A model generated the notes under the pieces. It was not told the origin of the DNA. It saw only the letters and a program-made list of their open reading frames with translations, and did not search any database. A stretch of 64,000 bases of DNA from positions 248,001 to 312,000 of IMG/VR virus record IMGVR_UViG_3300037297_000066. The stretch is one strand, 5' to 3'. Positions 9,557 to 59,646 of the stretch are shown here, in pieces. The translations under genes and the position numbers were made by a program. How positions within the stretch are numbered: the first letter of the stretch is position 1; each line of letters opens with the position of its first letter.

Positions 9557-9634
9557 GCTCTCGGACCCCGTGGAAGGGGCGACGGATTCTAACCCCGTGT
9601 CAGAGTGAGGGTTCAACTCCCTCCGAGAGCGCCA
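9557..9634 (+). tRNA. tRNA-Sup(CUA), amber anticodon
   Basis: GCTCTCG/CGAGAGC acceptor, loop TT-CTA-AC, GAGGG-TTCAACT-CCCTC, ends GCCA. Confidence 0.75.
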
Positions 9635-9635
9635 T

Positions 9636-9714
9636 GGGGACGTAGCTCAGTGGTTGAGAGCGGCGAGCTCTAAACTCGTGTCTGTCGGGGGTTCGAGTCC
9701 CTCCGTCCTCACCA
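9636..9714 (+). tRNA. tRNA-Sup(CUA), amber anticodon
   Basis: GGGGACG/CGTCCTC, D-arm GCTC-AGTGGTTGA-GAGC, GCGAG-CT-CTA-AA-CTCGT, ends ACCA. Confidence 0.85.
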
Positions 9715-30382: not shown

Positions 30383-30460
30383 GCCTCAGTAGCTCAATTT
30401 GGTAGAGCAGCGGACTCTTAATCCGAAGGTTTGTGGGTTCAATTCCCTCCTGGGGCACCA
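30383..30460 (+). tRNA. tRNA-Lys(CTT)
   Basis: CT-CTT-AA, ACCA. Confidence 0.9.
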
Positions 30461-30967: not shown

Positions 30968-31133
30968 GACTGACATCCCGCCGAGATGAGCCTACAAGCA
31001 ATCTGCTGGTTCGAATCCAGCCTCCGGCACCGGGGCTTAGCCCTATCCCTGCCGGAGTGGCCAAATTGGAAAAGGCAACAGTCTGAAGAAACTGTGTACA
31101 ACGCAATCCCGCTCTCACACTCGGATGTCAGTC
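30968..31133 (+). ncRNA. circularly permuted tRNA-like RNA with conserved terminal helix (Y-RNA-like), copy 1
   Basis: 11-bp terminal stem GACTGACATCC/GGATGTCAGTC; T-arm precedes acceptor hairpin, D-arm and anticodon-like arm. Confidence 0.8.
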
Positions 31134-31136
31134 TAT

Positions 31137-31209
31137 CCCAAAGTAGGCAAACTGGTACGCCGGACCGCTGTTAACGGTTTGATTGAGGGTTCGAATCCTT
31201 CCTTTGGGG
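31137..31209 (+). tRNA. tRNA-Asn(GTT)
   Basis: CT-GTT-AA. Confidence 0.85.
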
Positions 31210-31213
31210 CTAT

Positions 31214-31295
31214 GCTCAGGTGGCGGAATGGCAGACGCAGTCGGTTGAGGGCCGGCCGTCCTAGTGACGTGGGAGTTCGAGTCTCCCCCTGAGCA
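31214..31295 (+). tRNA. tRNA-Leu(GAG)
   Basis: TT-GAG-GG, long variable arm. Confidence 0.88.
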
Positions 31296-31301
31296 CCCTA
31301 T

Positions 31302-31377
31302 GGTGGCTGTACTCGTCTGGTGACGAGGGCTGACTGTGAATCAGCGGAGGCGGGTTCGATTCCCGTCAGTCACCCCA
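31302..31377 (+). tRNA. tRNA-His(GTG)
   Basis: CT-GTG-AA, G-1:C73, CCA. Confidence 0.85.
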
Positions 31378-31378
31378 A

Positions 31379-31462
31379 GCCTAAGTGGCGGAATGGCAGA
31401 CGCCCCGGTCTCAAAAACCGGTGTCCCTAGTGGGCGTGAGAGTTCGAGTCTCTCCTTAGGCA
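31379..31462 (+). tRNA. tRNA-Leu(CAA)
   Basis: CT-CAA-AA, long variable arm. Confidence 0.9.
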
Positions 31463-31566
31463 CTGACCCAGCGCAATTTCCTCCAACAGGTTGGCGTAGA
31501 CGTGGTTCGAGTCCACGAGGATACCGTTGGGTACGGCTTGTCGAGGGGCCCCTTGGCAAGTCTATT

Positions 31567-31651
31567 GCTACAGTGGCGGAATGGCAGACGCGCCAGCCTC
31601 AGAAGCTGGTATCCTTGAATGGGTGTGGGAGTTCGAGTCTCCCCTGTAGCA
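31567..31651 (+). tRNA. tRNA-Leu(CAG)
   Basis: CT-CAG-AA, long variable arm. Confidence 0.9.
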
Positions 31652-31658
31652 CTAGTTT

Positions 31659-31732
31659 GGGATCGTAGCTCAATTTGGGAGAGCACTGGCCTTGCAAGCC
31701 GGGGGTTAGGGGTTCGAGTCCCCTCGGTTCCA
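31659..31732 (+). tRNA. tRNA-Ala(TGC)
   Basis: CT-TGC-AA. Confidence 0.88.
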
Positions 31733-31740
31733 CTACGTTC

Positions 31741-31814
31741 GGGTCTAAGGCTGAGGTAGCCGGCTGGTTTCCAAGTCCAGTGACGATGGGGTTCGATTCC
31801 TCATAGACCCGCCA
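31741..31814 (+). tRNA. tRNA-Trp(CCA)
   Basis: loop TT-CCA-AG, G73, CCA. Confidence 0.7.
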
Positions 31815-31973
31815 GACGACATCCCGCCGGGATGAGCATACAAGCAAACGTTGGTTCGAATCCAACCTTCCCCACCAGGGCCTAGCCCAACCAATGGGGA
31901 AGTAGCCTAGTGGATAGGCAGCGGAAAGTAACTCCGTCGCAAGACTGAACCGCTCTCACACTCGGATGTCGTC
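31815..31973 (+). ncRNA. circularly permuted tRNA-like RNA (Y-RNA-like), copy 2
   Basis: 10-bp terminal stem GACGACATCC/GGATGTCGTC; acceptor CTTCCCC-ACCA...GGGGAAG. Confidence 0.8.
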
Positions 31974-31983
31974 AAACTTTCAT

Positions 31984-32057
31984 TGCGAGGATAGAGAAAG
32001 GGTGTCTCACGAGCTTCATGGGCTCGGGAACATCGGGTTCAACTCCCGACCTCGCTA
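31984..32057 (+). tRNA. tRNA-Met(CAT), 1:72 mismatch
   Basis: CGAGC-TT-CAT-GG-GCTCG. Confidence 0.7.
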
Positions 32058-32058
32058 C

Positions 32059-32133
32059 GGGACCGTAGTACAAGGGTAAGTGCGCACGCCTGATAAGCGT
32101 GAAACGAAGGTTCAACTCCTTCCGGTCCTACCA
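32059..32133 (+). tRNA. tRNA-Ile(GAT)
   Basis: CT-GAT-AA, ACCA. Confidence 0.88.
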
Positions 32134-32297
32134 ATCGAGCGTCCCGCCGAGATGAGCATACAAGCAATATGTTGGTTCGAATCCAACCTCCCCCCCTAGG
32201 GCCTAGCCCAACCAAACGGGGGAGTAGCCTAACGGTAAGGCAGCGGACTCTTAATCCGTGCGAAAGCATACCCCGCTCCCTCACTCGGACGCTCGAT
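32134..32297 (+). ncRNA. circularly permuted tRNA-like RNA (Y-RNA-like), copy 3; Lys(CTT)-type anticodon arm
   Basis: 11-bp terminal stem ATCGAGCGTCC/GGACGCTCGAT; GCGGA-CT-CTT-AA-TCCGT. Confidence 0.8.
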
Positions 32298-32378: not shown

Positions 32379-32546
32379 AAGATGCGGGCTAGCATGCATC
32401 TTAGAACTGAGCAGTCCCAGTTAGGAGCCTGGAAGCAAGTGTGCCTCGGTCTGGTGACGCACCTGTCTCGTCGGTGGGTGTAACGGTTTGATTCCGTGGT
32501 AGAGGGGCGGCTACTTAGGTGTGCGCAACACGGCTCGGTTCGACTT

Positions 32547-32623: not shown

Positions 32624-32750
32624 CATCAACTGTCGGAATGGTTGTCTAGGGACGCCTAGCCGAAGGGTTCGACACCTTCCTGGGAGCGGCGGTAGGAGGT
32701 TGGTTCGATTCCAACCCCGGCAGTGTTCTCGACCAGGCGAGGATGTGGAT

Positions 32751-32975: not shown

Positions 32976-33065
32976 GGGCCGGCAATGCGGACTTCAAGGT
33001 TCGCCACGACTCACAGTGCCCTTATGGGCCCGGGTCGTGTCGTCTAAGTTGGAAGACACCGGCCC
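32976..33065 (+). ncRNA. tRNA-like RNA permuted at the anticodon loop (YrlA-type architecture)
   Basis: outer GGGCCGG/CCGGCCC; order T-like arm, closed acceptor stem, D-arm GTCT-AAGTTGGA-AGAC. Confidence 0.6.
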
Positions 33066-33073
33066 TAACTCAT

Positions 33074-33145: not shown

Positions 33146-33244
33146 CCGGAGCTTGCCTCTCTAATAAACTAGCAGCCTGGGAGAGCGTACTGGGTTCGAA
33201 GTCCGGGCAACAGTCTTTGTTGTAAGCTGCAGCAAGTTCCATTT

Positions 33245-33320: not shown

Positions 33321-33418
33321 CCCCGTCAAGCCCGAAAGGGAGACGGGCGTGGGGGTCCTCCTAGATGCGGCATTGTCCGTGTGTTGCCTAGGCGACATCC
33401 TAGGAGTCTCCCCTGTTT

Positions 33419-35042: not shown

Positions 35043-35091
35043 CCCCAGCAGACACACTTGGACGGTATGCCGTCCCGCCGTGTCGGGAGAG
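35043..35091 (+). promoter_or_regulatory. copy of the conserved RNA helix overlapping the RBS of the TROVE-like gene (putative autoregulatory operator)
   Basis: GACAC-ACTT-GGACGG-TATG-CCGTCC-CGCC-GTGTC directly before GGGAGAG-ATG. Confidence 0.6.
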
Positions 35092-37011
35092 ATGAAAATG
35101 GTAGACCAGGTACAGCGTGAGAACCTGGGTCCGGCAGAGCGTATCATCAACGTCCTGTTGACCTACGAGGACCACATGGTCCACAACCGGGTTGGGATCG
35201 TAGAGCCCGATCCAGACAGCCAGATCGGCCTTCGCTGGACCCAGGCAACTTGGGTCGAGAAGGACGGCAAGAAGGTTGTCTACAAGCTCCTCCCTGGGGC
35301 CCGGGGACGAAACGGAAAGACCACTCGGCGCAAGGTCGAAGTGGGCACTCTCTGGAACGACGGCACGGTTCGCAGTGCCGATCGTCGGAAGATCGGGGAG
35401 CTCCGTCAGCCTGGCCTCTTTCCCGAAGTGGCAGTCTGGATGTACCGACAGGTGGCTGAGATCTACAAGCTCGACAACGAGTTCTGTGCTCGTTGGGCCA
35501 GCTACGCTTACTCCCAGACCCACCGAGATCTGAAGGTGGTACTGGCGGCCTTCCTCCTGGTTCAGGCTCGCAAGGGTGACCCTGTGATGGACCAGGGCAA
35601 GGTAGCCTTCTTCGACGACGACTTCCGTGACGTGGGTGAGGCAATGTGCCTTCACTACGGTGGGAAGTCCGACAAGTCTGCTCTCGATGCGAAGCTTCTG
35701 CTCCGCATTCGGAAGATTCTGGAGGTCCCTGAGATCGCCCAGATCAACCGAGATCTTGGGTTCGGGAAGTCGGCTCGGAGGGCTTACCTGGGTCGTTGGC
35801 CCAGGGTCGTTCAGAAGTGGCTGAGATACCGGGAAGACAACCCGGTTCTGCTGCGGGGCTTGGTCAACAAGGGTGCTTTCCGAGCAACCGTACAGGACTT
35901 GGCTCAGCAGTCTCGGTACAGTCCGTCGAGCCCCCTCTTCTACCAGATCCTTCGGTGGCCTCAGAAGCAGGCTGACGGGGGACACCGGAAGATGGCTCTC
36001 GACCAGAAGGTGACCAAGCAGGAATCCTGGGCGGGTAAGACCGAACAGGAGATCTGCGAGATCATCACCAGTCAGAGGACTGGTTGGAAGCGTGTCACGA
36101 CTCTGGTTCCGTCAGAGATTGGGGTTACCCGAGCCATCATGGCAGCAGCTGTGGAGGCAGGGTCCCTCTCGGACAAGGACCTGATCAACCACACGCCACT
36201 TTTGGAAGAACTGGGCCTCTTGCAGGACCAGGACGTTCGGGGGCGTTGGGAGGCTGCGCTTCAGGCTGCCGAGGACCGTCGAGCTGCTAACGTGGCTCGT
36301 AACGTCAAGAGCCAGCAGACTCGTGAGCAACTCGAAGGGGCTGCTGACCAGTCTGTCCTGAAGGCTGTCGAAGAGGTGGCTACAGGGATTCGGGTCTTCT
36401 TCTGTGTGGACCGATCTTCCTCGATGGGTATCGCTATCGAGGCAGCCAAGGAGCACATCGAGAAGTTCTTGCCTGGGTTCCCGCCCGATCAGCTCTTCAT
36501 CTGTGCCTTCAACTCGTCTGCTCGGAAGGTGACTCTCAAGCAGCACTCGTCGGTTGGAGTTCGGGAAGCTTTCCGGGGCATGGTCGGCTCTGGAGGCACG
36601 GACTACGGTGCGGCTGTACGCTTCTTCTCGAAGCCCGAGTACATGCCAGCCGAGGAGGAGGTTTCGCTCTTCTTCTTCATCGGAGACGAAGCAGCGGACA
36701 CTCGTTCCTTGGTTCAGGCCGTTCGGAACTCGGATCTCAACATCGTGGCCTTCGCTCTGGTGAAGGTCGTGTCTCCCGGTTGGGACCCTGGACTCTGTGT
36801 TCAGGAAGCTGCAGCCCAGTTGGGTATCCCTGTGATCCCGATCGACGAGAAGGTGTTCTCGGACGTCTATGCGACCCCGAGGATCCTTCGTGACCTGATC
36901 GCAAATACGCCGGTAGCTCAGACCCCTGGTCACAGGGAGGTTCGGCGGGTGACCCTTCTGGACACCATTCTGGACACTGAGCTGCTCAAGAAGCCCCTGT
37001 GGGCTGCATGA
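35092..37011 (+). CDS. TROVE/Ro60-like RNA-binding protein with C-terminal vWA domain
   Basis: helical N-terminal region with TROVE-like pattern (LDAKLLLRI..YLGRWPRVVQKWL..FRATVQDLAQQSRYSP); MIDAS FCVDRSSSMG, GGTDYG and FIGDE. vWA is secure; TROVE is inferred. Confidence 0.7.
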   Translation: MKMVDQVQRENLGPAERIINVLLTYEDHMVHNRVGIVEPDPDSQIGLRWTQATWVEKDGKKVVYKLLPGARGRNGKTTRRKVEVGTLWNDGTVRSADRRKIGELRQPGLFPEVAVWMYRQVAEIYKLDNEFCARWASYAYSQTHRDLKVVLAAFLLVQARKGDPVMDQGKVAFFDDDFRDVGEAMCLHYGGKSDKSALDAKLLLRIRKILEVPEIAQINRDLGFGKSARRAYLGRWPRVVQKWLRYREDNPVLLRGLVNKGAFRATVQDLAQQSRYSPSSPLFYQILRWPQKQADGGHRKMALDQKVTKQESWAGKTEQEICEIITSQRTGWKRVTTLVPSEIGVTRAIMAAAVEAGSLSDKDLINHTPLLEELGLLQDQDVRGRWEAALQAAEDRRAANVARNVKSQQTREQLEGAADQSVLKAVEEVATGIRVFFCVDRSSSMGIAIEAAKEHIEKFLPGFPPDQLFICAFNSSARKVTLKQHSSVGVREAFRGMVGSGGTDYGAAVRFFSKPEYMPAEEEVSLFFFIGDEAADTRSLVQAVRNSDLNIVAFALVKVVSPGWDPGLCVQEAAAQLGIPVIPIDEKVFSDVYATPRILRDLIANTPVAQTPGHREVRRVTLLDTILDTELLKKPLWAA

Positions 37012-37019
37012 GGTGAAAC

Positions 37020-37958
37020 ATGGGTTGGAGAGATCTGCTTCAGACCGAGGATGAGACGTTCGTCTCCCCCTGGGTGGGAGGAAGGTCTCTCCGATCCTTC
37101 GATCGCTTCTGGCGTATCGAGGGAAAACTCCCTCAAGAGCATGGTTGGCATAGGTTCCGTCTGGCGGGCCGGAAGGCTTGTTGGACGGGGCCTGCTGATC
37201 AGTCTGGGGAGCTCAGGGATCGTCTGAGAGGCTACCTGGTAGCTGACCGACTCGTGCCAGATGAGGCTCGGGTCGAGACAGATCCAATCAAGCTGGCTCA
37301 GGGATTCGAGAGAGTTCACCTGATCGAGCCTGGTTTGGATCGGTTCGTTCGGGTAGTCGCTGGCCGGTCCTTCGAGGACGGCCCTCTCATCTACGACAGC
37401 CAGGAGTTCCCTCTTGGTCCCGAGGATGAGGTTCTTCAGGCATACTTCGACGAAGCCAAGTCTGTGGACCATGTCTCGGGGGTCGCCCCTGCTTTGGAGG
37501 CTGCGTTTCGTTTCGAATCGTGGCATCGGGAGGAGATCCGGCGGCGTCGAGAAGAGGAACGAAAGCGTCGGGAGGAAGAGGATCGGCAGCGTCAGTTGGA
37601 GGCTCGGAGACAGGAAATCATCGAGACTTTGGGGGATGCTGCTGGACGTCGGGAACTGGCTCGTTACGACTTTGCTGAGGCAGCCAGAGCTGCTTTGGCG
37701 GTAGGAGGAGCTCAGTACCTAGACTCTCGTCCCTCCTACAACAAGGGCGAGATGGTTGTTCGGTACCGGATGAACGGCCGGGGGTTGGAGTGCACTTGTG
37801 ACGCTCAGACCCTGAGGATCATCGATTCCGGCTGCTGTCTGACCAACCACGCCACTGGGGAGCAGACCGACACGAGGTTCACCCTGGAGTCACTTCCGGG
37901 GGTCATACAAGAAGCTGACCGTCGGCACATCTTGGTGGTGTATCGTCACGTAGACTGA
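37020..37958 (+). CDS. conserved hypothetical protein; C-terminal E2-like (UBC-fold) candidate
   Basis: coiled coil followed by IIDSGCCLT..FTLESLPGVIQEA, resembling the E2 GxICL..TLxxL pattern; operon context. Confidence 0.45.
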   Translation: MGWRDLLQTEDETFVSPWVGGRSLRSFDRFWRIEGKLPQEHGWHRFRLAGRKACWTGPADQSGELRDRLRGYLVADRLVPDEARVETDPIKLAQGFERVHLIEPGLDRFVRVVAGRSFEDGPLIYDSQEFPLGPEDEVLQAYFDEAKSVDHVSGVAPALEAAFRFESWHREEIRRRREEERKRREEEDRQRQLEARRQEIIETLGDAAGRRELARYDFAEAARAALAVGGAQYLDSRPSYNKGEMVVRYRMNGRGLECTCDAQTLRIIDSGCCLTNHATGEQTDTRFTLESLPGVIQEADRRHILVVYRHVD

Positions 37959-37966
37959 GAGGTACC

Positions 37967-38338
37967 ATGCAGGAATCAGGCGTTGTTTTGGATCTGAAGG
38001 AGCAGCCGATCTATTGGCACACCCCAGCGGATCGGACAACGGGGGCTATTCCTGACAGCCACACTCTGTGGGAGGTCCTCTGGGAGAATCGTGAAAACCT
38101 GTCTGGGTTTGCCCACAGTCATCCTGGCCGTGGGCTTCCCGGGCCATCCTACACGGATGTCACGACATTCTCCTCCATTGAGCGAGCTCTCGGAAAGAAG
38201 CTCAATTGGTGGATCACCAGCGAGGATCGGGTCGCCTTGGTCAGGTGGTTTGGTCCTGGGAAACACGACTACAAGGCACTTGCCGTAGAAGATGAACTGG
38301 TCTGGGTACCCAGACTGAGAGAACTTTCCTACCCTTAG
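37967..38338 (+). CDS. JAB/MPN metallo-isopeptidase
   Basis: N-terminal E and GFAHSHP..GPSYTDV (HxH-x7-S-x2-D). Confidence 0.85.
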   Translation: MQESGVVLDLKEQPIYWHTPADRTTGAIPDSHTLWEVLWENRENLSGFAHSHPGRGLPGPSYTDVTTFSSIERALGKKLNWWITSEDRVALVRWFGPGKHDYKALAVEDELVWVPRLRELSYP

Positions 38339-38366
38339 GGGTAGACACGAAGGAAGGTCAAATCAG

Positions 38367-38627
38367 ATGGCAATCGAAGAGCATGAAGCACGTGTGAACA
38401 TCACCTGGGCTCAGCAGAACGGCGATCTGCCGGACCCAGTGGCATTCGACGCAACGGATGCCAACATCCTGACCTGGGCCACCGAAGCCGTCCGTGGTGG
38501 AGATGTCCCTGGAATCGAAGCTGACCAGAACGCCGACTTCGACGGGTACGTTGTGGAGCGATTCGCCTCCAAGGAGGAAGTCCCCTACAACCGGCTCGTG
38601 GTTCGGCCGAAGGCAGAGTTTGGTTGA
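38367..38627 (+). CDS. ubiquitin-like (beta-grasp) protein candidate
   Basis: 86 aa, strand-strand-helix-strand pattern, ends LVVRPKAEFG; lies between JAB and ThiF. Confidence 0.65.
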   Translation: MAIEEHEARVNITWAQQNGDLPDPVAFDATDANILTWATEAVRGGDVPGIEADQNADFDGYVVERFASKEEVPYNRLVVRPKAEFG

Positions 38628-38669
38628 TAACCAGGTGGGTGGCCTTCGGGCCATCCGCTGTCACCCAAG

Positions 38670-39257
38670 ATGGAGATGAAGATGCAGACAGTGATGGTAG
38701 TGGGTGTGGGGGCCCTCGGATCCCACGCCATCCAATTCCTCCGAGGAGCAGCCCGGATTCGTGCCATCGACTTCGATCGGGTGGAGCAGAAGAATACCCT
38801 TTCTCAGTTTCACCCCAGGAATTCGGTGGGCAAGAACAAGGCCCAAGCCCTCCAGCAGGCGATGCAGTTCCTCTGGGGGATCAAGATCGAGGTCATTCCT
38901 CACAAGCTCGTTCAGGGCAACGCTCAGGTCGTTCTCAAGGGAGCGGACCTGGTTCTAGACTGCCTGGACAACGGGGCTTCCCGTGAGATCCTGCAGAAGG
39001 CTGTTCGGCAGGCCGGTATTCCGTGTCTTCATGGAGCTCTCTCTGCCGGGGGCATGTTCGGCCGGGTCATCTGGGACGATCTGTTCAATATCGACTACGA
39101 GTCTGGAGAAGGGATTGCCACTTGCGAGGATGGGGCTTTCCTGCCGTTCATCGGTCTGGTGAGCACCTACCTGGCTCGGAGCGCCCAAGCCTGGCTAGAA
39201 ACTGGGAAGCAGCTTAGCTTCCAGGTCTACCCTTCGGCCCCCGCCACCAGGATTTAG
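38670..39257 (+). CDS. ThiF/E1-like adenylyltransferase
   Basis: VVGVGALGS, IDFDRVEQKN, KNKAQAL and DLVLDCLDN motifs. Confidence 0.92.
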   Translation: MEMKMQTVMVVGVGALGSHAIQFLRGAARIRAIDFDRVEQKNTLSQFHPRNSVGKNKAQALQQAMQFLWGIKIEVIPHKLVQGNAQVVLKGADLVLDCLDNGASREILQKAVRQAGIPCLHGALSAGGMFGRVIWDDLFNIDYESGEGIATCEDGAFLPFIGLVSTYLARSAQAWLETGKQLSFQVYPSAPATRI

Positions 39258-39361: not shown

Positions 39362-39504
39362 GGGGCTTCACAGGGGATGTGGTTCCCCGCCTGTTTTTTG
39401 GAACAGGAGCATCAGCTCTACCCCGCCACCACACTCGGTTTCCTAGGAAACCCGCCGTAGTTGGCCTACAAGCATTACCGGTTCGACTCCGGGAAGCCCC
39501 GCCA
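39362..39504 (+). ncRNA. CCA-ended tRNA-like RNA with the conserved helix inserted in the variable region
   Basis: GGGGCTT/AAGCCCC-G-CCA; T-arm CCGG-TTCGACT-CCGG; ACTCGG-TTTCC-TA-GGAAA-CCCGCC. Confidence 0.75.
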
Positions 39505-39513
39505 CTCAAAAAC

Positions 39514-39649
39514 GCCGCTCTTGAGGCACGGTCGCCTCACTTTCCCTACAAGAAAGCTAAGCTAGCCCCGCATGTACACTCGGCCCTCTCGGGGGCCCGC
39601 CGTATGGTGCATACAAGCAATTCCGGTTCGACTCCGGAGAGCGGCGCCA
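39514..39649 (+). ncRNA. second CCA-ended tRNA-like RNA with the inserted conserved helix
   Basis: GCCGCTC/GAGCGGC-G-CCA; D-arm TGAGGC/GCCTCA; ACTCGG-CCC..GGG-CCCGCC. Confidence 0.75.
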
Positions 39650-39777
39650 GGACATCCCGCAGGAACGTGCCTACACGCATACAGCTCAATTGGTAGAGCA
39701 TCGGATTCCTATTCCGAGGGTTGGGGGTTCAAATCCCCCTATGTGACCTTCCTACCGCACCTCCACTCGGATGTCCT
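39649..39777 (+). ncRNA. conserved helix enclosing a tRNA-Arg(CCT) body (39676-39746)
   Basis: AGGACATCC/GGATGTCCT stem; inner TCGGA-TT-CCT-AT-TCCGA, no CCA. Confidence 0.7.
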
Positions 39778-50331: not shown

Positions 50332-50784
50332 CTACTCTTCCCTCCTAGGGTCGCTGGGAGGAATAGAGTCTGGTCGGGGAGGCAGCGTTGCTACGTTGCA
50401 CCAGAAGAGTTGGATGACCTCAACGGTTTTTTGCAGAGCGTCGAATCCGAGAGGTTTTCGGATGTAGGCGTTGCAGCCGGTGGCGTATGCCTTCCTGACA
50501 TCCTCTTGAGAGTTTGAGTTCGTGAGGATTATCACGGGCAGAGCTCTGAGTCGGGGGTTTTTCCTGATTTCCTTCAGAACTTCCAAGCCATTGTACTTCG
50601 GGATGTTCAGATCCAAGAGGACCAAATCTGGTCTAGGAGAGTAGTCCTTAAGGTGGCGGAGGGCGGCTTCTCCGTCAGTTTCCACGTGAAGAGTGTGGTC
50701 GATAGCTGACTCTTCTAGGGCCAGCTGGACCAACTCCACATCACGGGAATTGTCTTCAATCAGGAGAATGCGGAAGTGACTCAT
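50332..50784 (-). CDS. single-domain response regulator (Rcp1-like)
   Basis: ILLIEDN, PDLVLLDLNIP, VIILTNS and AYIRKP motifs. Confidence 0.92.
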   Translation of the reverse strand: MSHFRILLIEDNSRDVELVQLALEESAIDHTLHVETDGEAALRHLKDYSPRPDLVLLDLNIPKYNGLEVLKEIRKNPRLRALPVIILTNSNSQEDVRKAYATGCNAYIRKPLGFDALQKTVEVIQLFWCNVATLPPRPDSIPPSDPRREE

Positions 50785-51823
50785 TTTGTGCCGGGAGGGT
50801 GAAGTGGAAAACAGTCCCTTGATTGGGCTCTGATTCGGTCCATATCTTACCCCCATGGTGTTCGACGACACGTTTGACTATGGCCAGTCCAATCCCCGTT
50901 CCTGGATACTGTTCAACAGTGTACAGACGGGTGAATACTCCGAAGATTCGGTTGGCATGCCTCATGTCGAAGCCGATTCCATTGTCCCTCACCGAAATGA
51001 GCCATTTGTGGTCATTGAAAGGCTTTGCGGTAACTTCGATTCTGGGGGGTCCCTTTCGATACTTGATGCTGTTGGAGAACAGATTCTGGAAGACTTGAGC
51101 CACCATGCTACGGTCGCCTTGGATGATGGGCAGGTCAGGGTCTAACTGGAACACTACGCCTGACTCTTTGACGTACCGTACTAAAGCCTTTTTGGCTTCC
51201 TCGATGGCTTGTCGGAGGGGGAAGGTCTTTTGGAGGTTGACTCGGCTGGCCCTTGAGAAGGAAAGCAAGTCTTCGATCTTCTGCGCCATGTGTTCGGTGC
51301 TGGAGATGATCTCGTCCAGGAAGTGTTTCTCTTCTTCCCCTAGGCTGTCGTAGACCCGTCGCTTGAGCAGGGTAGCAAATCCGGCTATGGCAGTGACAGG
51401 TTCTCGGAGGTCATGCGAGGTAATGTAGGCGAACTGATCTAGGTCGTCACTCTGTCGTTGCAGGTTGTTCTGCAGCGTTTTCAGGGTGTTTAGATCTTGC
51501 AGCTCTATGAGATAGTACCCTTGGTTGCTGGGGATCTTGGCTACTGTGACCAGAGCATGGAACGTGGATCCATCCCCTTTCACGTACTTTCTCTCCGCTG
51601 GCTCTCTCAAAGGCAGTGTGATGCTGTGCCCTTGTTTGGCGAACTGGTTGAGAGGTTTGCCTACCAGATACTCAGGCTTCTCTTTTAGGAGCACGCACAA
51701 CCGTCGGTTGGCAGCAATGATGGTGCCTTTCTGGTCGAGTACAGCTTGGGCTAGGTGAGATCCTTGGAAAGCCGCCCTACAAAGAAACTCGGCCGTGTTG
51801 TTCCTGCAGAAAGGCTCAGTCAT
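50756..51823 (-). CDS. PAS-domain sensor histidine kinase
   Basis: FAYITSHDLREP (H-box), QVFQNLFSNSIKY, VRDNGIGF and GTGIGLAIVK motifs. Confidence 0.95.
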   Translation of the reverse strand: MTEPFCRNNTAEFLCRAAFQGSHLAQAVLDQKGTIIAANRRLCVLLKEKPEYLVGKPLNQFAKQGHSITLPLREPAERKYVKGDGSTFHALVTVAKIPSNQGYYLIELQDLNTLKTLQNNLQRQSDDLDQFAYITSHDLREPVTAIAGFATLLKRRVYDSLGEEEKHFLDEIISSTEHMAQKIEDLLSFSRASRVNLQKTFPLRQAIEEAKKALVRYVKESGVVFQLDPDLPIIQGDRSMVAQVFQNLFSNSIKYRKGPPRIEVTAKPFNDHKWLISVRDNGIGFDMRHANRIFGVFTRLYTVEQYPGTGIGLAIVKRVVEHHGGKIWTESEPNQGTVFHFTLPAQNESLPHSPD

Positions 51824-52748
51824 GGGAGGAAGAGGGGCTCCAAAACTTCAACATGCTGGATTGGACGCTAGCATAATACGTGGCCCCGGCTCCTGCCAGC
51901 ACCCCCAGCAAAGTCAGGATTCCCAAGATGACTTTGGTACGGTTGTGCATCTTGGTGGTTTGAATCTGCGTTTGGTGGCCCGTCACGACTTCCTGCAGGT
52001 CCAGCATTGAAGGGCGATCGGCTTCGAGGTTGGTAACCCTTTCCTCTAGATTCTTGTGGTCGTTGACTAGTACATCTACCTGGGTACGCATCGAGGGCCG
52101 GTTGGAGTGTCCTTGAAGGATCTCCTTATCCAGCACTTGAAGCATCTTCATCATGATGTCTTGCTGAGTCTCGATCTTGACGACGGTTTTCCCCTGTTCT
52201 TGCATGTGCGTGTAGATGTTCCTGGACAGGTCGGCTACGGCTGCTGAGGTTTCGACCGTTCTGCTGGAGATGGCTTGATGTTCTCCACTTTGGTGAGCCA
52301 TTAGCAGAGCGGCTTTGGTTCGCTCCACCTTCTTGACCAACGTAGCTTCTGCAGGGGGTACCCGAATACTGGTTCGGCATTTTTCTATGGCGAACATGAT
52401 TCGACGGAAGATCTCTTCCGCTTCTGTGTAGTTCTTGACGATGTAGTCGGCCGCCCCGTCCTTGACCATGTTCAGGGCCAACTTACGGTCCTGGTTATGG
52501 GTCATGATGATGATCGGTACATCAGGAAACCTTTGGTGGAGGGTTTGGAAGGTTTCCTTGCCGGCCGAGTCAGGGAGGGAAAGGTCCAAGATCACCACAT
52601 CTATGGGCATCCTGGTCAATTGCTTGACAGCCTCTTCCAGATTGCAGGCTTCCAGGATCTCGGATCGATCGGTGGCGAACCGTTCTTCCAGCAGGTATCG
52701 CAGCAGCTCCCGGTCTGTCCGGGAATCTTCAACCATTAGCAGTCGCAT
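51816..52748 (-). CDS. response regulator receiver fused to coiled coil and C-terminal TM helix
   Basis: LLMVED, IILDLSLPD and DYIVK motifs; VILGILTLLGVLAGAGATYY. Confidence 0.85.
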   Translation of the reverse strand: MRLLMVEDSRTDRELLRYLLEERFATDRSEILEACNLEEAVKQLTRMPIDVVILDLSLPDSAGKETFQTLHQRFPDVPIIIMTHNQDRKLALNMVKDGAADYIVKNYTEAEEIFRRIMFAIEKCRTSIRVPPAEATLVKKVERTKAALLMAHQSGEHQAISSRTVETSAAVADLSRNIYTHMQEQGKTVVKIETQQDIMMKMLQVLDKEILQGHSNRPSMRTQVDVLVNDHKNLEERVTNLEADRPSMLDLQEVVTGHQTQIQTTKMHNRTKVILGILTLLGVLAGAGATYYASVQSSMLKFWSPSSSHD

Positions 52749-52942
52749 GTTCGCTAGTGAGGTTTTACAAGTGTTTTTCTCGGTGTACCAACATGGTACC
52801 TGGTCCTGTGGGTGTCCATATTTGACCACCGTTTGGTCGGATCTGACCGTAATCGGCTGGTCGGGCAATGCGAGGCGAGCGAGCTGGTGAACGCACCTCT
52901 CTCACACAGAGGATCCGCTGGGTTCGATCCCCAGGTCTCGCA

Positions 52943-54877: not shown

Positions 54878-55260
54878 GGGGCCGATTTGGTTTCGACAGA
54901 GGCATGGAGGTTGTAGTTGCGAGCAGAGGCGCTCGGCCCTTTCCAAAACCGAGCCGTAAATAGCTGCAAACGATAATGCAATCGCTGATCAGGCCATCGC
55001 AGCCTGAAAGCCGTCCGACCTTGAGATAGCCTTGGTAAAGGAAGGACGTCAGCACTAAGGCCACTGGACCACAAGGATTGCCTAACCACTTGTGATCGAC
55101 ATTGCAGAATGGCTTTGACGGGCGAGATTCCCGGAACCTCAGAAAGGCAGCCAGCGGCCTCCTGAGTTTTGAACATCCCCTTGGGGACTAGTTGGCTACG
55201 CTCGTGAATGAGGCTACAAGCAAAGGTTTCTGGAACCGGGTTCGAGTCCCGGCGGCTCCA
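54878..55260 (+). ncRNA. ssrA: tmRNA; tag peptide ANDNAIADQAIAA
   Basis: GGGGCCG..TTTCGAC 5' end, G3:U70 acceptor CGGCTCC-A, T-arm CCGGG-TTCGAGT-CCCGG; tag ORF 54966-55007. Confidence 0.92.
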
Positions 55261-55351: not shown

Positions 55352-55939
55352 ATGTTCACTCAAACGTTGATCCTCACGAACCACTACCGGGCACACGAAA
55401 TCATCGGGTGGCAGGATGCTGTGACTCGTATGTTCTGCGGCAAGATCGAGGTCTTGGCCCAGTACGATGAGATCCTAGCCGTTCTTGGACGGGAGACCCT
55501 CAAGTCTTTCCCAGATCTGAGACGAGCTCTGCGCCAGGTGATCGGGACCGATGCAGAGTCCTTGACCATCAAGGTGCCGGCCGTGGCCGTTCTTCGTCGG
55601 TCAATCGGGACCACGAAGAGCGGTATCAAGTTCAGCAAGATCAACGTCTGCCAGCGGGACGGGTTCACCTGCCAGTACTGCGGGAACAAGCTCCCGATGA
55701 GTCAGCTGAACTACGATCACGTCATTCCTCGGTCTCAGGGTGGTAAGACGGTGTGGACCAACATCGTGACCGCTTGCTACACCTGCAACTCGAAGAAGGC
55801 GAACCGGACGCCTGAGCAGGCCGGAATGGTTCTCTTGAGGGTTCCGGTCAAGCCGAAGACGCTGCCGATGACTCCTCCGATCATCAATCCGGAGCTGGCG
55901 CCCACAGAGTGGTTGCCGTATCTGGAAACGGCGGCATAA
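55352..55939 (+). CDS. HNH endonuclease
   Basis: NVCQRDGFTCQYCG, NYDHVIPRSQGG and NIVTACYTCNSKK motifs. Confidence 0.92.
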   Translation: MFTQTLILTNHYRAHEIIGWQDAVTRMFCGKIEVLAQYDEILAVLGRETLKSFPDLRRALRQVIGTDAESLTIKVPAVAVLRRSIGTTKSGIKFSKINVCQRDGFTCQYCGNKLPMSQLNYDHVIPRSQGGKTVWTNIVTACYTCNSKKANRTPEQAGMVLLRVPVKPKTLPMTPPIINPELAPTEWLPYLETAA

Positions 55940-58032: not shown

Positions 58033-58239
58033 GTTCGTAGGGGGCGTGAGTTTTGGCTCTCGCCCCCTACCCTTTTGGTGTACTATCCTCGGGTATGAAG
58101 TGCCCGAAGTGTGGGAGTACCAACGTCAAGGGATTGATGGTGTTCGATCCTGACTGGCGTGCAGGTCACTCCAAGTGTCGGGATTGTTGCTTCATAGACC
58201 ATTGGACTTGTTTTTGCGAACCTCCTTGGAGGCTGACCG

Positions 58240-59646
58240 TTGTCCCTAAAGTACGCAGCCCAGAAGGTGAGTGACGGCCACTACGTGTTGCCCAAAGTGG
58301 CAACCATGAAGGTCGAAGTTCACGCCTTTCTTTCGGAAGCCCTCTATGAGGCTTCTGAGGAGCAGGTGTGGGATCAGGCTCGGAATGCCGCTTCCTATGA
58401 GGGAGTGGTGGGGGCCTATCTGATGCCGGATACCCACACTGGGTTTGGGGTACCCATCGGGGGTGTGGTGGTGACAGAAGACACCCTCATTCAAGCCGGA
58501 TCGGGATATGACATCTCGTGTGGGGTGCTCTACATGAAGGTATCGGGGCTTTCTGCCAAGGGTACTCGTGGTAGGTACAACCGAGAGCGTTGGATCACCG
58601 AGGTGGAGAAACGTGTGGCGTTGGGAGTGGGATCCAAGCGCCCCAAGCTGATGCCCCAGTTCTCCCCAGCGTTGTTGGAGAGTATCTTCCGATATGGGGC
58701 CAAACCTCTTGGGACGAAGCCTGATGTATGCGAAAGGCAGTACATTCCGGTTCCCGAAGGCACAGACTTCACCAAGATCGAGAAAGCCTATGAGAAAGCC
58801 CTGCCCCAGCTCGGATCTCTAGGGGGCGGCAACCATTTCATTGAGATGCAAGTGGACGAGGCCACCGGGGATGTTTGGGTCATGATCCATTGCGGGTCCC
58901 GGGGTTATGGTTGGCAGACAGCCAACCACTACTTCTACGAGGGAGCCCAGCTTCGAGGTCTCAGGAAGAACCAACGGGAATCTTCTTGGCTGAGAATCGA
59001 CGAGCCCTTGGGTAGGGAATATTGGGCCTACCACAATTCGGCAGCCAACTATGCCATCGCCAATCGCCACACCATCGTTTCCGGCGTCCAGGAGGCCCTA
59101 GGAGAGGTTTTTGGGGCTGAGGCGGAGGTCTACTACGAAATCAGTCACAACCTCGTACAAGAGGAAACTCTGGTCCTTCCCGACGGAACTACAAAGCGAG
59201 GGTTCGTGCATCGGAAAGGGGCCACCCGAGCCTTTCCGGCCGGGCATCCTGATTTGGTAGGTACCAAGTGGGAGCCGACGGGGCACCCGTGTTTGATTCC
59301 GGGGTCGATGTTCTCAGGGGCTGCCATTCTCTTTGCCGAACCTCAGGCCCATCAGTCGGCTTGTTCGGTCAACCATGGGTCTGGCCGGGTGCTCGCTCGG
59401 GGGCAGGCCAAAAGGAAGCTTCATCACAAGCAGCAACGAATCGACGACCAGATGCGGACGGTCAAACGTCGGTTGGGGGGCGTCGAAGTAGAGGGCATCG
59501 TAGGCAATAGCAAGCACACGCCTTTGGACGAATGTGGAGAGGTCTACAAGGATCTGGACGAGGTGCTTGTCGTTTTGCAGCAGACAGGTATTGCAAGAGT
59601 CGCTCATCGTCTTTACCCTGTGGCGAACCTCAAGGGAACGGACTGA
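58240..59646 (+). CDS. rtcB: RNA ligase RtcB
   Basis: MPDTHTGFGVPIGG, GYDISCG, LGSLGGGNHF, IHCGSRG, HNLV, HRKGATRA, PGSM and HGSGR motifs. Confidence 0.96.
   Translation: MSLKYAAQKVSDGHYVLPKVATMKVEVHAFLSEALYEASEEQVWDQARNAASYEGVVGAYLMPDTHTGFGVPIGGVVVTEDTLIQAGSGYDISCGVLYMKVSGLSAKGTRGRYNRERWITEVEKRVALGVGSKRPKLMPQFSPALLESIFRYGAKPLGTKPDVCERQYIPVPEGTDFTKIEKAYEKALPQLGSLGGGNHFIEMQVDEATGDVWVMIHCGSRGYGWQTANHYFYEGAQLRGLRKNQRESSWLRIDEPLGREYWAYHNSAANYAIANRHTIVSGVQEALGEVFGAEAEVYYEISHNLVQEETLVLPDGTTKRGFVHRKGATRAFPAGHPDLVGTKWEPTGHPCLIPGSMFSGAAILFAEPQAHQSACSVNHGSGRVLARGQAKRKLHHKQQRIDDQMRTVKRRLGGVEVEGIVGNSKHTPLDECGEVYKDLDEVLVVLQQTGIARVAHRLYPVANLKGTD

What the first reader, a model, noticed from the sequence alone, without database searches (positions are those of the whole stretch)
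30968..32297. Three circularly permuted tRNA-like genes interleaved in the tRNA array
Seen at 30968-31133, 31815-31973 and 32134-32297. The order is outer stem 5' strand, TACAAGCA, T-arm (GTTCGAATC), acceptor 3' strand plus NCCN (copy 2 has an exact ACCA), a conserved GGGCYTAGCCC hairpin, acceptor 5' strand, D-arm, anticodon arm, a short variable segment, and the outer stem 3' strand. The break is at the variable-loop/T-arm junction and the anticodon arm is kept: CT-CTT-AA (Lys), AA-GTA-AC (lacks U33) and an 8-nt CTGAAGAA loop. Known: permuted tRNA genes occur in some algae and archaea, and two-piece permuted tmRNAs occur in bacteria; YrlA is opened at the anticodon loop instead. Inference: RNase P/3' processing could give two-piece tRNA mimics held by the outer helix. 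Ligation by the encoded RtcB is an alternative.
Basis: partly seen in the sequence, partly recalled or inferred. Interest (0 to 1): 0.88.

Follow-up and report, generated by a model that had tools for sequence, protein, structure and literature searches.

The report
Permuted tRNA-like Y RNAs, huge phage
The three elements are real, circularly permuted tRNA-shaped RNAs from a large, undescribed family in huge phages that sits next to a distant relative of the Ro60 RNA-binding protein, so they most likely act as phage "Y RNAs" (tRNA mimics that dock onto a protein ring) rather than as ordinary tRNAs.

Summary
Three about 160-nt units (30968-31133, 31815-31973, 32134-32297, + strand) fold as described: terminal helix, UACAAGCA, T-arm, acceptor 3' strand, closing insert, acceptor 5' strand, D-arm, anticodon arm, terminal helix.

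They belong to a family of at least 48 covarying members in about 30 related 80-620 kb phage contigs, one GenBank record and several MAG contigs. No Rfam 15 family reached threshold.

The terminal helix carries a conserved internal loop and occupies the variable-arm position. The same helix, closed by a tetraloop, forms a giant variable arm in non-permuted relatives with free NCCA ends (window 39362-39649). The copies are therefore true circular permutations.

RNase P substrate features are enriched at the closed acceptor: NCCA 13/48, U-1 22/39, G+1 37/39. Some members are tetraloop-capped, and U33 is kept in only 56%, which argues against routine decoding.

The RNAs are linked to an operon whose 643-aa protein (35080-37011) best matches Ro60/TROVE by predicted fold. 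This holds even in loci fetched by RNA alone.

Best reading: a new Y-RNA-like (YrlA-like) tRNA mimic, possibly matured into two pieces. The function is untested.

The parts
30968..31133 (+). Permuted tRNA-like RNA, copy 1. Terminal helix GACUGACAUCC/GGAUGUCAGUC; acceptor 3' strand followed by ACCG; 8-nt anticodon loop CUGAAGAA.
   Evidence: Fold (z -3.96). Model R1 scores 128.6 bits. Flanked by tRNA-Asp (ends 30967) and tRNA-Asn (starts 31137).
31815..31973 (+). Permuted tRNA-like RNA, copy 2. T-arm 31850-31866; acceptor 3' strand 31867-31873; ACCA 31874-31877; hairpin 31878-31888; acceptor 5' strand 31896-31902; D-arm 31905-31919; anticodon arm 31921-31937 (loop AAGUAAC).
   Evidence: Fold (z -3.91). 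R1 scores 137.1 bits.
32134..32297 (+). Permuted tRNA-like RNA, copy 3. Anticodon loop CUCUUAA. Positions 32240-32258 are identical to 19 nt of the phage tRNA-Lys(CUU) at 30407-30425.
   Evidence: Fold (z -4.41). R1 scores 141.3 bits. Shared 19-mer.
39362..39504 (+). Non-permuted relative, unit 1. 8-bp acceptor, long-stem D-arm, anticodon arm, the same helix module (ACUC / CGCC loop) closed by a short loop as a giant variable arm, UACAAGCA, 4-bp T-stem, and an end of GCCA.
   Evidence: Fold (0 of 200 shuffles as stable). Motif scan and acceptor search.
39514..39649 (+). Non-permuted relative, unit 2. Same layout as unit 1, ending ...AGAGCGGC-G-CCA.
39650..39776 (+). Third topology. The same helix module (GGACAUCC/GGAUGUCC, CGCA/ACUC loop) acts as a leader-trailer stem around a normal-order tRNA-Arg(CCU) at 39675-39748.
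   Evidence: Folds. tRNA called.
35080..37011 (+). 643-aa protein with a beta-rich N-terminus, a helical repeat region and a C-terminal VWA domain. Probably a very divergent Ro60 (TROVE plus vWA)-like protein and the candidate RNA partner.
   Evidence: Pfam finds only VWA_2. AlphaFold2 model has pLDDT 80. The nine best Foldseek PDB hits are all Ro60/Rsr/TROVE, with full-length alignments. The helical part alone again matches Ro60 best. The gene is linked to the RNA in loci fetched by RNA alone.
37020..37958 (+). Conserved 312-aa operon protein of unknown function.
   Evidence: No Pfam or NCBIfam family. Syntenic in relatives.
37967..38338 (+). JAB/MPN-like protein.
   Evidence: Pfam Prok-JAB, E 4.6e-4 here and 1.9e-5 in the L146 orthologue.
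38367..38627 (+). Conserved 86-aa protein ending in ...AEFG, between the JAB and E1-like genes. Possibly ubiquitin-like; this is inference only.
   Evidence: ORF listed. It is 54-63% identical in RNA-anchored loci.
38670..39257 (+). ThiF/MoeB/E1-like adenylyltransferase (195 aa). In 26 related loci, arrays of this RNA family start 50-1,700 nt downstream (usually under 700).
   Evidence: Pfam ThiF, E 1.7e-23. NCBIfam and PDB sequence matches. Neighbour clustering.
58240..59646 (+). RtcB RNA ligase, 26 kb downstream of the three copies. No direct link to the RNAs was shown.
   Evidence: Pfam RtcB, E 1.6e-87.

Best explanation
The three elements are paralogous members of a previously undescribed family of about 140-165-nt phage RNAs that mimic tRNA and are built like bacterial Y RNAs of the YrlA type.

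Steps shown or directly inferred from sequence:
- Each is probably cut out of the tRNA-array transcript by the enzymes that process the neighbouring tRNAs. The gap to the upstream tRNA (or tRNA-like unit) is 0-2 nt and the gap to the downstream tRNA is 3-10 nt.
- The core folds into a tRNA-like L-shape: T-loop, D-loop GG, U8, A26 and a covarying 15-48 Levitt pair.
- The acceptor stem is closed by an insert.
- The two RNA ends pair into a roughly 22-bp rod with conserved internal loops (5' CC-ANCA/CGCC-GAU..., 3' ...ACUCGG). This rod leaves the body where a class II tRNA has its variable arm.

Steps inferred by analogy:
- The rod is the docking site for the divergent Ro60-like protein encoded 2.8 kb downstream on the same strand.
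- The tRNA-shaped end presents a tRNA look-alike to tRNA-handling enzymes or nucleases, as Y RNAs do for Ro60.
- In members that carry NCCA, U-1 and G+1, including copy 2 and probably copy 1, host RNase P and 3' trimming probably open the acceptor. This would give a two-piece RNA held together by the acceptor stem and the rod.

The structure and the gene linkage are shown. Protein binding, processing and biological role are inferred.
For: - Structure: RNAalifold on 8 members and a covariance model give 48 full-length members. Of all cells, 95% are paired, and 32 of 34 pairs show compensatory changes. The covariation score is 0.82, against 0.20 for shuffles and at most 0.14 for slid partners.
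- tRNA tertiary signature: the 15-48 pair is A-U in 30 and G-C in 9 of 48 members. The T-loop is UUCRANU, A26 is present in 47/48 and U8 in 41/48.
- YrlA-like plan: terminal helix, T-arm, loop-closed acceptor and D-arm, with YUAC starting the segment before the T-arm. Compare the Rfam YrlA consensus and PMC4201824.
- The window copies carry GCCGAGAU next to the terminal helix. A bona fide mycobacteriophage YrlA beside its Ro gene carries GGCCGAGAG at the same place.
- Two family members lack the anticodon arm and so match the YrlA layout.
- Partner protein: the Foldseek top hits for the 643-aa protein are Ro60/Rsr/TROVE. This holds for the whole model (E 3.5e-7 to 1e-5) and for the helical part alone (probability 0.84-0.97, against below 0.2 for other helical repeats).
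- Linkage: the RNA lies downstream of the operon in 26 anchor loci. In 9 of 14 loci fetched by RNA pattern alone the operon is adjacent. In three of these the RNA is 97-360 nt from the Ro60-like gene itself.
- Processing: enrichment of NCCA, U-1 and G+1, and the precedent of RNase P cleavage plus CCA addition in M. smegmatis YrlA.
Against: - No TROVE domain is detectable by sequence in the 643-aa protein, the window or about 190 related loci. The profile-profile match to TROVE has only 30% probability.
- The structural matches have low TM-scores (0.19-0.38), and the model's pTM is 0.51-0.57.
- The YrlA Ro-binding motif GNCGAA(N)G is not conserved across the family.
- The Rfam YrlA model scores only 24.7 bits against a threshold of 69.
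- In the non-permuted relatives the presumed docking helix is an internal hairpin, unlike any known Y RNA.
- The operon also encodes JAB, a small conserved protein and an E1-like enzyme. Their relation to the RNA is unknown and could point to a different partner.
- No expression data were available.
Confidence: 0.55

Rival explanations
1. They are genuine permuted (split) tRNA genes. After RNase P cleavage at G+1 and trimming or CCA repair, the two pieces form a working tRNA with an open-ended long variable arm. This tRNA is aminoacylated, perhaps by an anticodon-independent class II-type synthetase (Ser, Leu or Tyr), and used in translation or in another aminoacyl-transfer reaction.
For: - Non-permuted relatives with free NCCA ends, 8/4 or 7/5 acceptor/T branches and tRNA-Sec-like D-arms resemble allo-tRNAs. 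Some allo-tRNAs are active in translation (PMC5389517).
- NCCA, U-1 and G+1 are enriched in the permuted form.
- The anticodon arm has canonical size: 5 bp, with a 7-nt loop in 32/46 members. A37 is present in 25/32 and A38 in 26/32.
- Copy 3 carries the exact anticodon arm of the phage tRNA-Lys(CUU).
- One related phage locus encodes an EF-Tu homologue.
Against: - U33 is present in only 18/32 seven-nt loops. From general knowledge, it is nearly universal in decoding tRNAs. Copy 2 has A33 and copy 1 has an 8-nt loop.
- Seven members have the acceptor capped by 2-4 nt loops.
- The long single-stranded linkers (UACAAGCA...) are conserved but have no counterpart in tRNAs.
- Most allo-tRNA-UAU species tested were inactive in translation.
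- A full set of ordinary tRNAs is already encoded.
Confidence: 0.15
2. They are free-standing decoys or sponges for host tRNA-targeting defence nucleases or tRNA-binding enzymes. Each paralogue imitates a different tRNA anticodon arm. The long terminal helix only keeps a nicked RNA together, and the neighbouring Ro60-like operon is not the partner.
For: - Several paralogues per genome have different anticodon loops.
- Copy 3 copies the tRNA-Lys(CUU) arm exactly.
- The phage invests heavily in tRNAs, a tmRNA and RtcB.
- The literature links phage tRNA arrays to escape from tRNA-cleaving defences (abstracts listed).
Against: - The terminal helix has conserved internal-loop sequences across distant phages. 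A simple clamp would not need these.
- The family has tight, unbiased linkage to the Ro60-like operon.
- There is no enrichment of any particular anticodon.
Confidence: 0.15
3. The shared helix is a removable processing element, that is, an intron-like or leader-trailer stem. It is cut on both strands by an endonuclease and the body is rejoined by RtcB. This would yield normal tRNAs from the permuted, insert-bearing and leader-trailer genes, as in archaeal and algal bulge-helix-bulge processing.
For: - One module occurs in three topologies: permuted, internal, and flanking a normal tRNA-Arg.
- RtcB is encoded in the window and near one MAG copy.
Against: - The module has symmetric 4x4 and 2x1-2 loops, not a 3-4-3 bulge-helix-bulge motif.
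- Removing it leaves 20-28 nt of conserved unpaired linker, not a canonical variable region.
- No splicing endonuclease was seen among the window proteins scanned.
- Conservation of the helix loops fits a binding site in the mature RNA better.
Confidence: 0.05
4. They are decaying pseudo-tRNAs or recombination debris in a tRNA array, with no function.
For: tRNA arrays recombine, and copy 3 shares 19 nt with a neighbouring tRNA.
Against: All six helices covary across 48 members from distant phages, and unpaired motifs are conserved.
Confidence: 0.02

Closest known systems
YrlA-type bacterial and phage Y RNAs (Rfam RF02553; Chen et al. 2014, PMC4201824)
   Same: - The RNA ends pair into a long helix with internal loops.
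- The body is a tRNA mimic with a T-arm, a D-arm and a loop-closed acceptor stem.
- The Levitt 15-48 pair covaries.
- YUAY/YUAC starts the segment before the T-arm.
- The genes lie on the same strand within a few kb of a Ro60-type gene.
- One YrlA (M. smegmatis, 7-bp acceptor) is opened by RNase P and gains CCA. The same route is predicted here.
   Different: - YrlA is a tRNA opened at the anticodon stem. This family keeps a complete anticodon arm, often plus a mini-hairpin, and is opened in the variable region.
- The linkers are long and conserved (UACAAGCA; A-rich ...CGCAA...).
- The helix motif differs: ACUCGG with CC-ANCA, not GNCGAA(N)G.
- The partner is Ro60-like only by predicted fold.
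- The Rfam model scores far below threshold.
- Non-permuted versions exist.
Circularly permuted tRNA genes of red and green algae and some archaea (Soma et al. 2007; from memory, and mentioned in papers listed)
   Same: The gene order is 3' half, then an intervening sequence between the acceptor strands, then 5' half. The leader and trailer pair with each other. An encoded CCA can precede the intervening sequence.
   Different: Those genes use a bulge-helix-bulge junction, a splicing endonuclease and a ligase to make a circular intermediate and then a normal decoding tRNA. Here there is no bulge-helix-bulge motif, the break lies in a long variable-arm rod that is itself conserved, and the anticodon loops are not under tRNA-like constraint. 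I know of no report of such genes in bacterial viruses, and a literature search returned none.
Two-piece (permuted) tmRNA
   Same: The permutation logic is the same: an acceptor piece ending in CCA lies upstream, and the 5' acceptor strand lies downstream. RNase P opens the precursor and the two pieces stay paired. From general knowledge, the long helix leaves the tRNA-like domain at the variable-arm position, like tmRNA helix 2.
   Different: There is no tag reading frame and there are no pseudoknots. A real D-arm and anticodon arm are present. The Rfam permuted-tmRNA model scores 20 bits against a threshold of 47. The 15/17 match to this phage's own tmRNA (55207-55223) is not seen in relatives' tmRNAs.
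allo-tRNAs and irregular tRNA polycistrons (Mukai et al. 2017, PMC5389517)
   Same: The non-permuted relatives (39362-39649 and 17 others) have 8/4 or 7/5 acceptor/T branches, a long-stem short-loop D-arm, a long variable arm, very diverse anticodons and clustered genes. The authors also proposed possible non-translational roles.
   Different: The variable arm here is a 45-60-nt rod with conserved loops. The three focal copies are permuted, have a 7/5 branch and have an ordinary D-arm. Linkage to a Ro60-like operon was not described for allo-tRNAs.

Membership tests
YrlA / bacterial Y RNA | tRNA-like module with T-arm, D-arm, loop-closed acceptor stem and tRNA tertiary pairs | tested here: met
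   Consensus structure and covariation. Levitt pair A-U in 30 and G-C in 9 of 48. Canonical T-loop.
YrlA / bacterial Y RNA | Helix formed by the 5' and 3' ends, carrying the Ro60-binding motif GNCGAA(N0-1)G on the 5' strand | tested here: inconclusive
   A terminal helix is present in all members. The window copies have GCCGAGAUG, like GGCCGAGAG in the Bxz1 YrlA. The family consensus is CC-ANCA-GAU / ACUCGG.
YrlA / bacterial Y RNA | Encoded within about 4 kb of a Ro60/TROVE gene, on the same strand | tested here: inconclusive
   The gene at 35080-37011 lies 2.8 kb downstream on the same strand and is Ro60-like by Foldseek. Linkage holds in RNA-anchored loci. No TROVE domain is found by sequence.
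YrlA / bacterial Y RNA | tRNA body opened at the anticodon stem, with no anticodon arm | tested here: not met
   46 of 48 members keep a 5-bp anticodon arm.
YrlA / bacterial Y RNA | Reaches the Rfam RF02553 gathering score | tested here: not met
   Best score is 24.7 bits on copy 3, against a threshold of 69. Adjacent ordinary tRNA pairs score as high.
YrlA / bacterial Y RNA | Bound by Ro60/Rsr in cells | not testable with these tools
   Needs immunoprecipitation or a gel-shift assay.
Circularly permuted tRNA genes | 3' half upstream of 5' half, with acceptor strands joined through an intervening sequence | tested here: met
.
Circularly permuted tRNA genes | Bulge-helix-bulge motif at the leader-trailer junction | tested here: not met
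   The helix has symmetric 4x4 and 2x1-2 internal loops.
Circularly permuted tRNA genes | Product is a canonical decoding tRNA (U33, 7-nt loop, free CCA end) | tested here: not met
   U33 is present in 18/32 seven-nt loops. Fourteen loops are not 7 nt. Seven acceptors are capped by 2-4 nt loops.
Two-piece tmRNA | Tag reading frame and pseudoknots between the tRNA-like halves | tested here: not met
   The RNA is about 160 nt with no such domain. Permuted-tmRNA model: 20 bits against a threshold of 47.
allo-tRNA | 12-bp acceptor branch split 8/4 or 9/3, long variable arm, tRNA-Sec-like D-arm | tested here: not met
   The three focal copies are 7/5 with an ordinary D-arm. The non-permuted units at 39362-39649 do show 8/4 and a long-stem D-arm.

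The most novel reading that the evidence does not exclude
These are the first permuted tRNA genes found in bacterial viruses. After RNase P opening they become two-piece, CCA-ended tRNAs. Like their non-permuted long-variable-arm siblings, they are aminoacylated independently of the anticodon and then work while tethered by the variable-arm rod to a Ro60-like ring. That would be a protein-docked tRNA used for recoding, amino-acid transfer or tRNA quality control, possibly coupled to the adjacent JAB, small-protein and E1-like genes.
Probability: 0.15. Interest if true: 0.92.

Novelty: new variant of a known kind. Interest (0 to 1): 0.8.

Why it matters
Y RNAs and Ro60 are conserved from bacteria to humans, yet what the tRNA-like end of bacterial Y RNAs does is still open. 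This family would matter for four reasons.

- It widens the class to huge phages and to a Ro60-like protein that sequence searches miss.
- Nature has made the same tRNA-plus-rod object in both permuted and non-permuted gene orders. That gives a built-in experiment on whether a free CCA end matters.
- It links such RNAs to a JAB, small-protein and E1-like operon.
- These about 160-nt genes are invisible to tRNA finders and to Rfam. They are unannotated in the one GenBank relative, so tRNA arrays of large phages are being under-read.

Tried and rejected
- Megablast of the region against 50,697 phage records found no match.
- An exact search for the 17-nt 5' block in IMG/VR found only the source contig (437 kb). 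The other ten hits were chance.
- A search for the GGGCYTAGCCC hairpin found nothing informative outside the source contig.
- Rfam found no family above threshold. YrlA, permuted tmRNA and tRNA gave only partial weak hits, at gathering thresholds and permissive thresholds.
- Most TACAAGCA...GGTTCGAATCC hits are ordinary tRNA-Val(UAC).
- The idea that the 5' block derives from the tmRNA was dropped. The 15/17 match is absent from relatives' tmRNAs.
- Ro60 by sequence: Pfam TROVE, phmmer with Bxz1 gp220 and a 40-sequence TROVE HMM found nothing in the window or the clade loci. The PDB profile search found only VWA.
- K-turn, box C/D, hammerhead and bulge-helix-bulge readings of the conserved blocks were checked by eye and rejected.
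- A TcdA-like reading (ct6A) of the ThiF protein was rejected. It is closer to ThiF, MoeB and Uba4.
- The BFVD fold search failed with a tool error.
- Three recently described bacterial tRNA-mimic families (skipping-rope, DUF2693-FD, salivarius-1) did not appear among the Rfam matches.
Full report
**Observation**

The window carries 52 tRNA genes and a tmRNA on the + strand. It comes from a 437,331-bp IMG/VR contig, IMGVR_UViG_3300037297_000066.

The conserved parts are:
- a 5' block, TCCCGCCGRGATGAGCMTACAAGCAA;
- the T-arm;
- the GGGCYTAGCCC hairpin;
- a 3' block, CCGCTCYCWCACTCGGA.

Each minimum-free-energy fold contains these elements:
- a 10-11 bp terminal helix whose sequence differs between copies but stays paired;
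- an internal loop, a 3-bp helix and a 4-bp helix;
- a T-arm;
- a 7-bp acceptor stem closed across the hairpin;
- a D-arm and a 5-bp anticodon arm.

The z-scores are -3.9 to -4.4. The unit boundaries abut the neighbouring genes: the upstream tRNA, or for copy 2 an uncalled tRNA-like unit, ends 0-2 nt before each unit, and the next tRNA starts 3-10 nt after it.

**A real RNA family**

A pattern search brought in clear relatives from other very large phage contigs. The RNAalifold structure of eight sequences had compensatory changes in 24 of 34 pairs.

A covariance model built from them (R1) found about 48 full-length members scoring above 45 bits. They lie in 33 of 61 loci taken from related 80-620 kb phage contigs, always on the strand of the anchor gene and often in 2-5 copies.

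On the 48-member alignment:
- 95% of cells are paired;
- 32 of 34 pairs show changes on both sides;
- the covariation score is 0.82, against 0.20 in shuffles and at most 0.14 when partners are slid.

The family also occurs in these places:
- the only GenBank relative, Virus Rctr197k, where it is unannotated;
- MAG contigs labelled Methylobacter, Deltaproteobacteria, Verrucomicrobia, Polyangiaceae and others.

No Rfam 15 family reaches threshold.

**Anatomy**

The body has the tertiary signature of tRNA:

| Feature | Count |
|---|---|
| U8 | 41/48 |
| A26 | 47/48 |
| T-loop UUCRANU | all 48 |
| Levitt pair 15-48, A-U | 30/48 |
| Levitt pair 15-48, G-C | 9/48 |

D-loop GG is also kept.

The terminal helix leaves the body between the anticodon arm (often followed by a mini-hairpin) and the T-arm. 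This is where class II tRNAs have their variable arm.

Conserved unpaired segments flank the inner helix: YUACA(A/C)GCA on the 5' side and an A-rich ...CGCAA... on the 3' side. The helix itself has a 4x4 internal loop, with ACUC on the 3' strand facing CGCC or ANCA on the 5' strand.

The acceptor-closing insert is not conserved. It ranges from 2 to 49 nt, and the GGGCYTAGCCC hairpin is specific to this phage.

**Permutation is genuine**

The same helix module also occurs closed by a tetraloop. In that form it makes a 45-60-nt variable arm in non-permuted units with an open acceptor stem. Two such units are in the window (39362-39504 and 39514-39649, both ending G-CCA) and 17 more are in relatives.

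These non-permuted units have 8/4 or 7/5 acceptor/T branches and long-stem, short-loop D-arms. This resembles the allo-tRNAs of Mukai et al. (PMC5389517).

A third arrangement uses the module as a leader-trailer stem around a normal tRNA-Arg(CCU) (39650-39776).

Arrays mixing permuted and non-permuted units are common; L178, for example, has five units in a row. A permuted unit is what results from cutting a tandem pair of non-permuted units at the tips of their variable arms.

**Is the acceptor opened?**

| Feature in the permuted form | Observed | Comparison |
|---|---|---|
| NCCA right after the 7-nt acceptor 3' strand | 13/48 (NCC in 21/48) | about 0.75 expected for CCA |
| U at position -1 | 22/39 | 23% U in the inserts |
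| G at position +1 | 37/39 | not applicable |

From general knowledge, these are the preferences of bacterial RNase P.

M. smegmatis YrlA has a 7-bp acceptor, is cleaved by RNase P in vivo and in vitro, and gains CCA (PMC4201824). A two-piece product is therefore plausible for copy 2 (ACCA, U-1), likely for copy 1 (ACCG, U-1) and less so for copy 3 (CCUA, C-1).

Seven members are instead capped by 2-4 nt loops, including UUCG. A free end therefore cannot be essential to whatever the family has in common.

**Not ordinary decoders**

The anticodon arm keeps tRNA dimensions, but U33 is present in only 18 of 32 seven-nt loops. Fourteen loops are not 7 nt long, and the "anticodons" span many codons with no pattern.

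Copy 3 shares 19 identical nucleotides with the phage tRNA-Lys(CUU), which shows exchange with real tRNA genes.

**The partner**

In 26 related loci the RNA array starts downstream of a ThiF/E1-like gene, 50-1,700 nt away and usually under 700 nt. That gene ends a conserved operon:
- a 643-aa VWA protein;
- a 312-aa protein;
- a JAB-like protein;
- a conserved 86-aa protein;
- the ThiF/E1-like protein.

In the window this canonical site holds the non-permuted units. The three focal copies lie 2.8-4.1 kb upstream of the 643-aa gene, on the same strand.

Evidence on the 643-aa protein:
- By sequence it shows only a VWA domain.
- Its AlphaFold2 model (pLDDT 80) has all nine best PDB matches in Ro60/Rsr/TROVE structures, aligned over 550-590 columns (E 3.5e-7 to 1e-5). 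These rank ahead of all VWA-only proteins.
- A separate model of the helical region alone again matches Ro60 structures best (probability 0.84-0.97, TM 0.27-0.38). Other helical repeats have probability below 0.2.
- A profile-profile alignment to TROVE proteins is weak (30%) but falls on the equivalent segment leading into the VWA MIDAS motif.

The anchor loci were chosen through this gene, so I tested linkage separately in loci fetched by RNA pattern alone. Nine of 14 hold the operon beside the RNA. In three (L101, L221, L238) the RNA is 97-360 nt from the Ro60-like gene itself.

This mirrors the criterion used to define YrlA RNAs: within 4 kb of Ro60 on the same strand. A bona fide phage YrlA beside the Bxz1 Ro gene carries GGCCGAGAG next to its terminal helix. 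The window copies carry GCCGAGAUG at the same place.

**Conclusion**

The best-supported reading is a new Y-RNA-like family. Its members are tRNA mimics whose end-to-end helix docks a divergent Ro60-like protein. Some members are probably opened by RNase P into two pieces.

It is not a member of YrlA as currently defined, for these reasons:
- it retains an anticodon arm;
- it has a different helix motif;
- it scores far below the Rfam threshold;
- its partner is recognisable only by predicted fold.

Rivals that remain possible are working split tRNAs, nuclease decoys acting without the protein, and intron-like processing. Debris is excluded by covariation. Binding, processing, charging and function all remain to be tested.

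Noticed in passing
window 37020-39257 (and L253, L014, L261, L193, L226): A conserved operon joins the Ro60-like gene to a 312-aa protein with no family match, a JAB/MPN-like protein, a conserved 86-aa protein ending in ...AEFG, and a short ThiF/E1-like enzyme. This looks like a ubiquitin-like or sulfur-carrier activation set with no E2, sitting next to tRNA-like RNAs.
   Followed up: partly
window 9557-9714: Two tandem tRNAs have a CUA anticodon, and ARAGORN labels them Pyl. They are likely amber suppressors, which suggests the phage reads TAG as a sense codon. The GenBank relative annotates the Ro60-like gene only as a misc_feature.
   Followed up: no
window 55207-55223: The phage tmRNA carries AAUGAGGCUACAAGCAA just 5' of its T-arm, a 15/17 match to the 5' block of the three elements. 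The five tmRNAs found in related loci lack it, so it is probably coincidence or a local exchange.
   Followed up: yes
window 31741-31814: A tRNA-like unit directly upstream of copy 2 ends in an encoded CCA. ARAGORN does not call it and it falls below the Rfam threshold (27.2 bits). Its anticodon region appears to have an oversized loop.
   Followed up: no
window 31464-31566, 32379-32546, 32624-32750, 32976-33073, 33148-33244, 33321-33418: Several 100-170-nt gaps in the tRNA array contain T-arm-like GGTTCGA motifs but no called tRNA. They may hide further irregular tRNA-like RNAs.
   Followed up: no
L033 5359-6663 (contig IMGVR_UViG_3300032782_000001): A related 436-kb phage encodes an EF-Tu homologue with GTP_EFTU domains 1-3, a few kb from irregular tRNA-like units that carry repeated UACAAGCAA motifs.
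   Followed up: no
window 56605-59646: A 475-aa protein with an N-terminal VWA domain lies immediately upstream of RtcB. An HNH endonuclease (55352-55939) sits just after the tmRNA.
   Followed up: no
window 50756-52868 (- strand): The phage encodes a PAS-domain histidine kinase and a response-regulator receiver protein side by side, within the second tRNA-rich region.
   Followed up: no
L192 3124-3271 and 5842-6933: On a cyanobacterial MAG contig, a family member lies 2.6 kb upstream of an RtcB homologue on the same strand.
   Followed up: no
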